From Octopus bimaculoides (taxonomy: Eukaryota), in assembly GCF_001194135.2 (NCBI RefSeq), contig NC_068981.1, positions 14,210,550-14,256,047 of the forward strand: a DNA stretch of 45,498 nucleotides. The letters are read 5' to 3'. Position 1 is the stretch's first letter, and every line of letters begins with the position of its first letter. The position numbers and the translations under genes are program-made. Under the pieces are notes generated by a model. The model saw nothing but the letters and a program-made list of their open reading frames with translations. It was not told the DNA's origin and searched no databases. Positions 12,374 through 12,835 of the stretch are shown in pieces.

Positions 12374-12835
12374 ATAGTTATCGCCAAGCCAACATGGCAG
12401 TCCCAAAATTAGGACGAAAGCTGCCGTGAATTAGCTCCAAGAAGCCATCGCCTCTAGCTAGCTATGTGACACACGAAACCTGTGTCCTTTATAACCTTCG
12501 AACAGGGGAGGTCAGCAGTGTCCCCCTGCTGGCTTGGCATCTGCAGACTAGTTTCAGGGTGTTGCCCCTTGTCAATGCAGAGCAGCCAAGCCCTAGCCAG
12601 GCTAGGGCTTGGCTAGGGCTTGGCTGCTCTGCATTGACAAGGGGCAACACCCTGAAACTAGTCTGCAGATGCCAAGCCAGCAGGGGGACACTGCTGACCT
12701 CCCCTGTTCGAAGGTTATAAAGGACACAGGTTTCGTGTGTCACATAGCTAGCTAGAGGCGATGGCTTCTTGGAGCTAATTCACGGCAGCTTTCGTCCTAA
12801 TTTTGGGACTGCCATGTTGGCTTGGCGATAACTAT
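12374..12835. repeat. Perfect long inverted repeat: two 225-bp arms with a 12-bp spacer
   Basis: Checked base by base: 12374-12598 is the exact reverse complement of 12611-12835. This explains the near-identical ORFs 12466..12720(+) and 12489..12743(-). Confidence 0.98.

What the first reader, a model, noticed from the sequence alone, without database searches (positions are those of the whole stretch)
12374..12835. 462-bp palindrome with 100% identical 225-bp arms
Seen: exact arms of non-repetitive, GC-richer sequence with a 12-bp spacer, while every other repeat here is visibly diverged. Established: such palindromes form cruciforms, are unstable, and give long dsRNA when transcribed, a substrate for ADAR or Dicer. 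Inference: a very recent foldback duplication or a young hairpin-type element. If it is in the receptor intron it would be a perfect dsRNA in a neural pre-mRNA. An assembly or library chimera is a serious alternative.
Basis: partly seen in the sequence, partly recalled or inferred. Interest (0 to 1): 0.7.

Follow-up and report, generated by a model that had tools for sequence, protein, structure and literature searches.

The report
Near-perfect 462-bp DNA palindrome, origin unresolved
A 462-base stretch in a repeat-rich animal genome scaffold reads almost the same on both strands; it is most likely a young hairpin-shaped mobile-element insertion or fold-back duplication, with no sign of a gene or function, and an assembly error is not excluded.

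Summary
Window 12374-12835 is a 462-bp inverted repeat. It breaks down as a 225-bp arm, one central A, an extra 11-bp tandem copy (GGCTAGGGCTT), then the 225-bp reverse-complement arm. Removing the 11-mer leaves a perfect 451-bp palindrome. It is the only non-microsatellite perfect inverted repeat in the window and its GC-richest stretch, non-coding, with no match in any collection I could search.

It lies 2.1 and 2.9 kb from the nearest gaps. On the right it abuts a short (AT)5 run and the 3' end of a truncated LINE. It is bracketed by TA/TA, and each arm carries the 8-mer GCCAAGCC three times.

The window also holds an old 69%-identical palindrome and a MITE-like inverted repeat, so hairpin-shaped elements recur here.

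Readings:
- **Young TA-inserting hairpin (MITE-like) element made by fold-back synthesis:** about 0.4.
- **Local fold-back duplication:** about 0.25.
- **Assembly or library artefact, or arms made identical by k-mer collapse:** about 0.27.

The "receptor intron / neural dsRNA" idea has no support, because no exon was detected in the window. Reads, other copies in the genome and orthologous loci could not be reached. This is a modest-interest new member of a known kind.

The parts
12374..12598 (.). Left arm (225 bp; 52.8% GC over the repeat finder's 229-nt arm, 12374-12602), exact reverse complement of 12611-12835
12599..12599 (.). Single central base (A) of the underlying perfect 451-bp palindrome. 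It is also the centre of a local 13-bp inverted repeat, CCAAGCCCTAGCC-a-GGCTAGGGCTTGG (12586-12612)
12600..12610 (+). Extra 11-bp unit GGCTAGGGCTT. The right side has 2.4 tandem copies (12600-12625) and the left arm 1.4. This slippage-type duplication is the only asymmetry of the palindrome
12611..12835 (.). Right arm (225 bp)
12375..12376 (.). Candidate TA target-site duplication, left copy (the element proper would be 12377-12832, GTTATCGCC...GGCGATAAC)
   Evidence: Read directly from the sequence. Uninformative on its own, because TA is self-complementary and the site is in a (TA)n context
12833..12834 (.). Candidate TA target-site duplication, right copy
12383..12390 (+). GCCAAGCC motif, outer copy of the left arm (6 nt inside the end if TA is the duplication); mirror copy at 12819-12826
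12585..12592 (+). GCCAAGCC motif, inner copy of the left arm (6 nt from the arm's inner end); mirror copy at 12617-12624, plus 12606-12613 in the duplicated 11-mer
12531..12538 (-). GCCAAGCC motif, inverted copy within the left arm; mirror copy at 12671-12678 (+)
12836..12846 (.). Short (AT)5 run directly abutting the right arm
12847..13137 (-). 5'-truncated LINE, 3' end pointing at the palindrome. The ORF2 C-terminal motif is at 12928-13137(-). The 3' UTR carries the 20-mer GGCGGTGCTCCAGTATGGCC (12872-12891), shared with the tails of the window's tRNA-derived SINE copies
12291..12310 (.). (TA)10 microsatellite, followed by (AG)4, 63 bp to the left of the palindrome

Best explanation
The palindrome is a real, evolutionarily young, non-coding hairpin-shaped DNA element. 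It consists of two ~222-225-bp terminal inverted repeats placed back to back with no internal sequence, inserted at a TA dinucleotide in a short (TA)n run just past the 3' end of a truncated LINE.

Shown:
- the exact structure, including the perfect 451-bp core plus one 11-bp slippage duplication beside the centre;
- GC content in the range of the window's SINE and LINE pieces, well above the AT-rich background;
- absence of coding capacity;
- the TA/TA flanks;
- the 8-mer GCCAAGCC three times per arm, with direct copies 6 nt from each end of the arm;
- two other, older hairpin or MITE-like inverted repeats in the same 45 kb.

Inferred:
- The element was born by fold-back (snap-back or template-switch) DNA synthesis from a single transposon end. 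This explains symmetry running exactly through the centre.
- It was mobilised in trans by a Tc1/mariner-type transposase that recognises the repeated motif.
- The 11-bp duplication arose later, or during the same synthesis. By turning a spacer-less palindrome into one with a 10-12-nt asymmetric core, it lowers cruciform and hairpin extrusion and helps the sequence survive.

If the arm identity is genuine and the arms evolve neutrally without gene conversion, zero differences in 225 bp puts arm divergence below 1.3% (95% bound).
For: - Structure.
- Uniqueness and non-chance.
- Composition: the palindrome is the GC maximum of the window, and five of the next six GC peaks fall on SINE or LINE pieces identified here.
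- No coding potential or protein homologues.
- No RNA family or tRNA; the sub-threshold microRNA hits are what any perfect hairpin gives.
- Not vector, E. coli, phage, bacterial or viral DNA.
- TA/TA flanks, and no 3-, 4-, 5-, 8- or 9-bp duplication that would fit other superfamilies.
- GCCAAGCC three times per arm, reached by 30 of 5000 dinucleotide shuffles; all 7 copies in the window lie inside the palindrome.
- Other hairpin or MITE-like elements in the window: 25608-25960 (69% self-complementary) and 44702-45211.
- If the genome is an octopus (my memory of the SINE sequence only), a repeat annotation of Octopus vulgaris reports recently active Tc1-mariner and MITE insertions (PMC13282606).
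- Embedded in 2.1 and 2.9 kb of unique sequence, away from gaps.
Against: - No second copy of the arm was found anywhere: not in the window and not in the searchable collections, which however do not contain this genome. The defining multicopy property of a transposon family is therefore untested.
- A TA duplication is automatic in a (TA)n context and merely lengthens any palindrome by 2 bp.
- The termini (GTTATCGCC) are not a recognised Tc1/mariner end.
- The repeated motif is only 8 nt and was noticed post hoc.
- A short-read assembler would normally break at a multicopy perfect repeat, so its clean assembly suggests low copy number.
- The ~23 nt at 12344-12366 in the left flank are also GC-rich, so the left compositional boundary is not sharp. 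This fits a native arm (rival 1).
- Perfect arm identity may be produced by k-mer collapse in assembly.
Confidence: 0.4

Rival explanations
1. Local fold-back inverted duplication that is not mobile. One arm (most simply the left one, continuous with the GC-rich left flank) is native sequence. A break or stalled fork near the fragile (TA)n/LINE-tail region let a 3' end snap back on the native 13-bp inverted repeat CCAAGCCCTAGCC-a-GGCTAGGGCTTGG, or switch template strands there. It then copied ~225 nt of its own strand, slipped once by 11 bp, and was joined to the other end at the (AT)5 run.
For: - Symmetry runs exactly through a single central base, with a slippage duplication in a 4-nt/11-nt direct-repeat context.
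- The arms are identical while all other repeats are diverged.
- It is single-copy as far as can be seen.
- It lies between microsatellites and at a LINE 3' end.
- The ~23 nt of left flank at 12344-12366 are GC-rich like the arm.
Against: - The copied tract would have to stop just 7 nt (AAATTA + A) beyond the GC-rich part of the left flank and be joined to the (AT)5 run with 0-2 nt of homology. This is possible but needs a coincidence.
- A 225-nt snap-back tract is, to my knowledge, long for polymerase-theta-type templated insertions.
- The GC content (in the range of the window's TE pieces) and the repeated 8-mer are not explained.
- Two other hairpin-shaped elements in the same 45 kb point to a transposon-type source.
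Confidence: 0.25
2. Assembly or library artefact. Either the second arm does not exist in the animal's DNA (a mis-join or gap-fill through a repeat, or recurrent snap-back chimeras formed at the native 13-bp inverted repeat during library preparation), or the palindrome exists but its '100% identity' comes from collapsing the two arms onto the same canonical k-mers.
For: - The window is a gappy scaffold (12 N-runs of 10-743 nt, 3741 N). That pattern looks like short-read mate-pair scaffolding, which is my inference.
- Arms of 225 nt probably exceed the read length, so an assembler cannot phase the two arms independently.
- Palindromic chimeras are a documented artefact of amplification-based libraries (PMC6218980, abstract seen).
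- Palindrome centres are badly under-represented in sequencing (PATRR8: about 50 of about 30,000 reads; PMC4255720), so few reads would support the centre.
- A GC-rich perfect inverted repeat of this length would be an outlier in a eukaryote: the longest perfect one with a spacer of 8 nt or less reported in human has 140-bp arms (PMC13155455).
Against: - A de Bruijn 'turn-around' would continue into the reverse complement of the left flank. Instead the right arm is followed by 2.9 kb of unrelated sequence with a recognisable LINE tail.
- All three junctions and the one-sided 11-bp duplication need read-supported k-mers that a non-palindromic locus could not supply. This is an inference from how k-mer assemblers work.
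- There is no other such palindrome in the window, and none at contig ends.
- It is not adaptor, vector, E. coli, phage or bacterial sequence.
Confidence: 0.27
3. A functional hairpin-RNA locus (a source of endogenous siRNA, or an ADAR substrate) kept perfect by selection.
For: The transcript would fold into a ~226-bp perfect duplex (the DNA-parameter fold shows the pairing), a suitable Dicer or ADAR substrate in principle. Sub-threshold hits to microRNA hairpin models exist, but any perfect hairpin produces them.
Against: - No Rfam family reaches its gathering score.
- There is no evidence of transcription, a host gene or conservation.
- No exon was found in the window.
- Selection on a duplex tolerates G:U pairs and compensatory changes and does not require 100% DNA identity.
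Confidence: 0.03

Closest known systems
Palindromic (hairpin-type) MITEs derived from Tc1/mariner elements, such as human Made1, the source of the mir-548 hairpins, and Stowaway-like MITEs (from my own knowledge)
   Same: Short, non-coding, almost entirely made of two inverted repeats with a tiny loop. TA flanks. Can fold into one long hairpin. Inserted in TA-rich DNA.
   Different: Those elements are ~80-300 bp, AT-rich, present in hundreds to thousands of diverged copies, and their arms are imperfect. This one is 462 bp and 53% GC, has identical arms, and no second copy could be shown.
IR/DR-type Tc1-like transposon ends (Sleeping Beauty, Minos, Paris, S elements: ~200-250-bp terminal inverted repeats with a transposase-binding direct repeat at each end of each repeat; from my own knowledge)
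   Same: Arm length of 222-229 bp. A short motif (GCCAAGCC) in direct orientation 6 nt from the outer end and 6 nt from the inner end of each arm. A TA duplication is possible.
   Different: The shared motif is only 8 nt, against ~15-30 nt. There is no transposase gene between the arms. The termini are not CAGT-like. The resemblance is recalled from memory, not tested against real family members.
Human palindromic AT-rich repeats (PATRR8, 11, 17, 22)
   Same: Several hundred bp; arm identity of 98-100% in symmetric alleles; asymmetric alleles carry central or one-sided insertions or deletions; AT-rich repeats flank them; hard to sequence (PMC4255720).
   Different: PATRRs are 97-99% AT. This palindrome is 47% AT, so the defining composition is not met. 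Polymorphism and translocation behaviour are unknown here.
Fold-back inversions and inverted duplications formed at short inverted repeats (E. coli, yeast, cancer amplicons)
   Same: An inverted duplication centred on a short native inverted repeat with a small spacer. Palindrome-centred inverted duplications are known in E. coli (PMC3315005, abstract seen).
   Different: Those events usually give large, chromosome-scale duplications or hairpin-capped ends. Here the copy is only 225 bp and is rejoined to unique sequence.
Drosophila hairpin-RNA (hpRNA) endogenous siRNA loci (from my own knowledge)
   Same: Long inverted repeats with short loops that would give a long perfect dsRNA.
   Different: hpRNA loci are defined by transcription and small RNAs, and often by homology to a target gene. 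None of this is shown or testable here.

Membership tests
MITE / non-autonomous Tc1-mariner-type element | Terminal inverted repeats at both ends | tested here: met
   225-226-nt exact arms reaching the ends of the element
MITE / non-autonomous Tc1-mariner-type element | TA target-site duplication | tested here: inconclusive
   TA at 12375-76 and 12833-34 flanks GTTATCGCC...GGCGATAAC. However TA is self-complementary and the site lies in a (TA)n run. No 3-, 4-, 5-, 8- or 9-bp duplication fits other superfamilies
MITE / non-autonomous Tc1-mariner-type element | Multiple dispersed copies in the genome | not testable with these tools
   No other copy in the 45-kb window. The genome itself is not in any searchable collection
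MITE / non-autonomous Tc1-mariner-type element | Small (under ~800 bp) and without coding capacity | tested here: met
   462 bp; stops in all six frames, longest open stretch 58 aa; no homologues
IR/DR-type Tc1-like ends | Two transposase-binding direct repeats per inverted repeat, one at the outer end and one at the inner end | tested here: inconclusive
   GCCAAGCC lies 6 nt from both ends of each arm, plus one inverted copy. 30 of 5000 shuffles reach three copies. The motif is only 8 nt and was found post hoc
Palindromic AT-rich repeat (PATRR) | Near-perfect palindrome of several hundred bp | tested here: met
Palindromic AT-rich repeat (PATRR) | Extreme AT-richness (over 90%) | tested here: not met
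   The arm is 52.8% GC; PATRR8 alleles are 97-99% AT (PMC4255720)
Drosophila FB-type foldback transposon | Long inverted repeats built of tandem sub-repeats, with a 9-bp duplication | tested here: not met
   The only tandem repeat is the 11-mer at 2.4 copies beside the centre. No 9-bp duplication
Fold-back inverted duplication (template switch or hairpin priming) | Inverted copy adjacent to the original, with a short spacer at a short native inverted repeat | tested here: met
   A 13-bp inverted repeat centred on 12599; the spacer is 1 nt before the 11-bp duplication and 10-12 nt after it
Fold-back inverted duplication (template switch or hairpin priming) | An ancestral, allelic or orthologous locus with a single arm | not testable with these tools
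   No second assembly, reads or orthologous locus could be reached
de Bruijn 'turn-around' or chimeric-read assembly artefact | The palindrome continues into the reverse complement of its own flank, or ends at a contig end or gap | tested here: not met
   Outward extension is 0. The right flank is an unrelated LINE tail. The nearest gaps are 2.1 and 2.9 kb away
de Bruijn 'turn-around' or chimeric-read assembly artefact | Reads fail to span the centre and both outer junctions | not testable with these tools
   No read data are available
hpRNA / structured RNA gene | Match to a curated RNA family, or evidence of transcription or small RNAs | tested here: not met
   No Rfam hit at gathering score. 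The best sub-threshold hit is 58 bits against an 80-bit cut-off, a generic hairpin match. Expression is not testable

The most novel reading that the evidence does not exclude
The palindrome is real and transcribed inside a neural gene. It would then be either the founding copy of a new hairpin transposon family born by fold-back synthesis, or a perfect ~226-bp intronic dsRNA feeding ADAR or Dicer in a cephalopod, where RNA editing is exceptionally extensive. In both cases the 11-bp central duplication would be a captured example of in vivo palindrome stabilisation.
Probability: 0.05. Interest if true: 0.6.

Novelty: new member of a known kind. Interest (0 to 1): 0.3.

Why it matters
If real, this is an unusually long, GC-rich, essentially perfect palindrome in an animal genome. 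In human, the longest perfect inverted repeat with a spacer of 8 nt or less was reported to have 140-bp arms, and long eukaryotic inverted repeats are AT-rich (PMC13155455). Such sequences are hotspots of breakage and rearrangement.

This one carries a readable history: a perfect 451-bp core plus a single 11-bp slippage duplication next to the centre. That would illustrate how palindromes are born by fold-back synthesis and then made tolerable.

If it is an artefact, it is a useful flag for quality control of this assembly. Nothing so far suggests a gene, a regulatory RNA or a new kind of system.

Tried and rejected
1. **Contaminant or vector.** blastn of the arm against plasmids, E. coli genomes and phages found no match. 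Exact 24-mer scans of JGI metagenomes, IMG/VR and GTDB genomes with two different arm words found none. Rejected as far as these collections reach.

2. **Coding origin of the arm.** All six frames contain stops. Two word-indexed protein searches covering four arm frames returned nothing.

3. **Structured RNA or tRNA-derived element.** No Rfam hit at gathering score and no tRNA. The sub-threshold microRNA hits are generic hairpin matches. A single arm folds only slightly better than shuffles (z = -2.1).

4. **Larger diverged palindrome.** I thought the left flank might be a second, inverted copy of the LINE/SINE tail, making the locus a larger diverged palindrome. Smith-Waterman scores equal those of shuffled sequence. 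Rejected.

5. **LINE target-site duplication containing palindrome sequence.** Only (TA)n matches were found. Uninformative.

6. **Host gene or 'receptor' exons.** Pfam on all ORFs of 38 aa or more (joined into pseudo-proteins, so sensitivity is low) and on the ten best ORFs singly found nothing. A motif scan for Cys-loop receptors, glutamate receptors and GPCRs gave only trivial hits. A piece at 35376-35750(-) that I took by eye for reverse transcriptase was not confirmed.

7. **Independent assemblies through exact-protein look-ups.** ORFs inside and next to the palindrome are not on record.

8. **Organism identification.** The LINE-tail homologues come from unnamed ENA metagenome contigs, and a full-text search for the SINE sequence found nothing. 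'Octopus' rests only on my memory of the SINE sequence.

Full report
**1. What the window is**

The 45.5-kb window is a eukaryotic scaffold.
- It is 31.8% GC, with 12 N-gaps of 10-743 nt (3741 N in total).
- It is dense in (TA)n, (CA)n and (GA)n microsatellites.
- It holds diverged copies of a tRNA-derived SINE, 69-87% identical to one another.
- It holds LINE fragments. The ORF at 43251-43625(+) has 286 relatives (E <= 0.001) in an exhaustive HMMER search. The long ones (~1000 aa) carry endonuclease and reverse-transcriptase domains, and the match falls at their C-termini.
- No Rfam family reaches threshold and no tRNA gene is found.
- From memory only, the SINE sequence looks like the abundant octopus SINE. 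I could not verify the organism.

**2.

Positions 12374-12835 form a 462-bp inverted repeat.
- About the geometric centre, the arms are exact for 226 nt (12374-12599 and 12610-12835). Then come one G:T mismatch, two more pairs and a 4-nt loop.
It is a left arm 12374-12598, a single central A (12599), an extra 11-nt unit GGCTAGGGCTT (12600-12610), and a right arm 12611-12835.
- The right side has 2.4 tandem copies of the 11-mer and the left arm has 1.4.
- Deleting one copy leaves a perfect 451-bp palindrome whose only unpaired position is the central base.
- As single-stranded DNA the region folds at -325.5 kcal/mol, against -75.6 +/- 4.6 for shuffles.
- It is the only non-microsatellite perfect inverted repeat (arm >=14, spacer <=60) in the window.
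- It is the window's GC maximum: 58% in the central 229 nt and 52.8% per arm. Five of the next six GC peaks fall on SINE or LINE pieces identified here.

**3. Surroundings**

- The palindrome sits inside a 5.4-kb gap-free stretch, 2.1 kb and 2.9 kb from the nearest gaps.
- To the left lie (TA)10, then (AG)4, then 55 nt of unique sequence whose ~23 nt at 12344-12366 are GC-rich.
- To the right lies (AT)5, followed at once by the 3' end of a 5'-truncated LINE on the minus strand.
  - The ORF at 12928-13137(-) aligns to the extreme C-terminus of two ~1000-aa endonuclease/reverse-transcriptase proteins (E = 5e-4 and 1e-3).
  - Its 3' UTR carries a 20-mer shared with the tails of the SINE copies, at 1 mismatch. 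None is expected by chance.
- The arm has no other copy in the window.

**4. What the arm is not**

- It is not vector, E. coli or phage DNA.
- It is absent as exact 24-mers from JGI metagenomes, IMG/VR and GTDB genomes.
- It is not coding: stops occur in all frames and there are no homologues.
- It is not a known RNA.
- A single arm has only marginal structure of its own (z = -2.1).

**5. Internal features**

- The 8-mer GCCAAGCC occurs three times per arm. Two copies are direct, at 12383 and 12585, and one is inverted, at 12531.
- If the flanking TA is a target-site duplication, the two direct copies lie 6 nt from the outer end and 6 nt from the inner end of the arm.
- Three copies are reached in 30 of 5000 dinucleotide-preserving shuffles.
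- All seven copies in the 45-kb window lie inside the palindrome.
- This layout recalls IR/DR-type Tc1-like transposon ends (~200-250-bp inverted repeats with binding sites at both ends). That resemblance comes from memory, and the motif was found post hoc.
- The only possible target-site duplication is TA/TA (12375-76 and 12833-34). That is expected for Tc1/mariner-type elements but is uninformative in a (TA)n context. Duplications of 3, 4, 5, 8 or 9 bp do not fit.

**6. Other hairpin-shaped elements in the window**

- 25608-25960 is an old palindrome, 69% identical to its own reverse complement over 366 nt.
- 44702-45211 is a MITE-like element with 105-nt arms at 94% identity and a 300-nt spacer.
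- Inverted-repeat elements are therefore common here. This raises the prior that the perfect one is a young member of that general class rather than a one-off accident. The three are not related in sequence.

**7. Mechanism**

Symmetry that runs exactly through one central base is what fold-back synthesis produces. A 3' end snaps back on a short inverted repeat, or switches to the complementary strand, and copies itself. A random internal deletion between two transposon ends would not give this. I therefore take fold-back synthesis as the origin in every 'real' scenario (inference).

The 11-bp duplication is a classic slippage product between GGCT...GGCT direct repeats. It gives the palindrome a 10-12-nt asymmetric core. 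By established knowledge of palindrome instability, spacers and central asymmetry reduce hairpin and cruciform formation (PMC13155455), and asymmetric PATRR alleles do not give translocations (PMC4255720). This asymmetry should therefore stabilise the sequence.

**8. Real or artefact?**

Against a trivial artefact:
- A de Bruijn turn-around would run on into the reverse complement of the left flank. Outward extension is 0, and the right flank is an unrelated LINE tail.
- The left junction, the asymmetric centre and the right junction all need k-mers that a non-palindromic locus would not provide (inference).
- No other such structure occurs in the window or at contig ends.

For caution:
- The scaffold looks like a short-read assembly.
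- Arms of 225 nt probably exceed the read length, and the arms share canonical k-mers. '100% identity' can therefore be manufactured by bubble-popping.
- Palindrome centres are poorly covered in sequencing.
- Palindromic chimeras are a known library artefact (PMC6218980).

I put about 0.27 on an artefact (structure or identity), about 0.40 on a young TA-inserting hairpin element, about 0.25 on a non-mobile local fold-back duplication, and about 0.03 on a selected hairpin-RNA gene.

**9. Age**

This holds only if the identity is genuine, evolution is neutral and there is no arm-to-arm conversion. Zero differences in 225 bp bounds arm divergence at under 1.3% (95%). If the genome is an octopus, the calibration quoted for O. 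vulgaris repeats (JC 0.09 at about 25 My and 0.2 at about 56 My; PMC13282606) gives less than about 2 My. The SINE copies around it are 13-31% diverged.

**10.

The speculation was a perfect dsRNA in a neural receptor pre-mRNA, acting as an ADAR or Dicer substrate. I found no exon of any kind in the window, and no way to test transcription. It stays possible but unsupported.

**11. Verdict**

The sequence feature is confirmed and non-random. It is best filed as a new member of known kinds: hairpin or MITE-like elements, or fold-back inverted duplications. It is not a PATRR, because the composition test fails. It is not an FB-type foldback transposon, because it lacks sub-repeats and a 9-bp duplication. 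Interest is modest (0.3). Its value lies in its unusual length, GC content and perfection for a eukaryote, and in its readable two-step history. Read-level validation is the decisive missing step.

Noticed in passing
window 25608-25960: A second, old palindrome: the segment is 69% identical to its own reverse complement over 366 nt. The arms abut at about 25784, with termini CACTACGATCGTT... / ...AACGACCGTAGTA. It is unrelated in sequence to the perfect palindrome and probably a decayed hairpin or MITE-like element.
   Followed up: partly
window 44702-44806 and 45107-45211: A MITE-like element of about 510 bp: 105-nt terminal inverted repeats at 94% identity, a 300-nt spacer, termini GTTGCTATTG... 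/ ...CAATAGCAAAC, flanked by ATC on both sides (a possible 3-bp duplication).
   Followed up: partly
window 9734-9969, 16045-16287, 24956-25095, 26404-26514, 29764-29883, 39241-39650, 42446-42834: Diverged copies (69-87%) of one tRNA-derived SINE with an internal (CA)n/(TA)n microsatellite. Its 3' tail (…GGCGGTGCTCCAGCATGGCC…CTGAAACAAGTAAAAG) is shared with the LINE fragment at 12847-13137, suggesting a SINE/LINE partnership. From memory, the sequence resembles the abundant octopus SINE.
   Followed up: partly
window 43251-43625 (+): An open 125-aa C-terminal piece of a LINE ORF2. It has 286 relatives at E <= 0.001. The full-length relatives (~1000 aa) carry Exo_endo_phos and RVT_1 domains. 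The best hit is 58% identical and comes from an unnamed ENA metagenome contig.
   Followed up: yes
window gaps, e.g. 5002-5467, 7486-8228, 10187-10244, 15701-15977, 21713-21929, 28xxx, 36081-36423: Most of the 12 N-gaps are bordered by microsatellites ((TA)n, (CTAT)n, (GA)n, (CA)n). The assembly therefore breaks systematically at simple repeats. Two pairs of gaps have identical lengths (10 and 217 nt).
   Followed up: no
window 26011-26150: A 60-nt unit repeated in tandem (90% identity between neighbouring copies), just downstream of the old palindrome.
   Followed up: no
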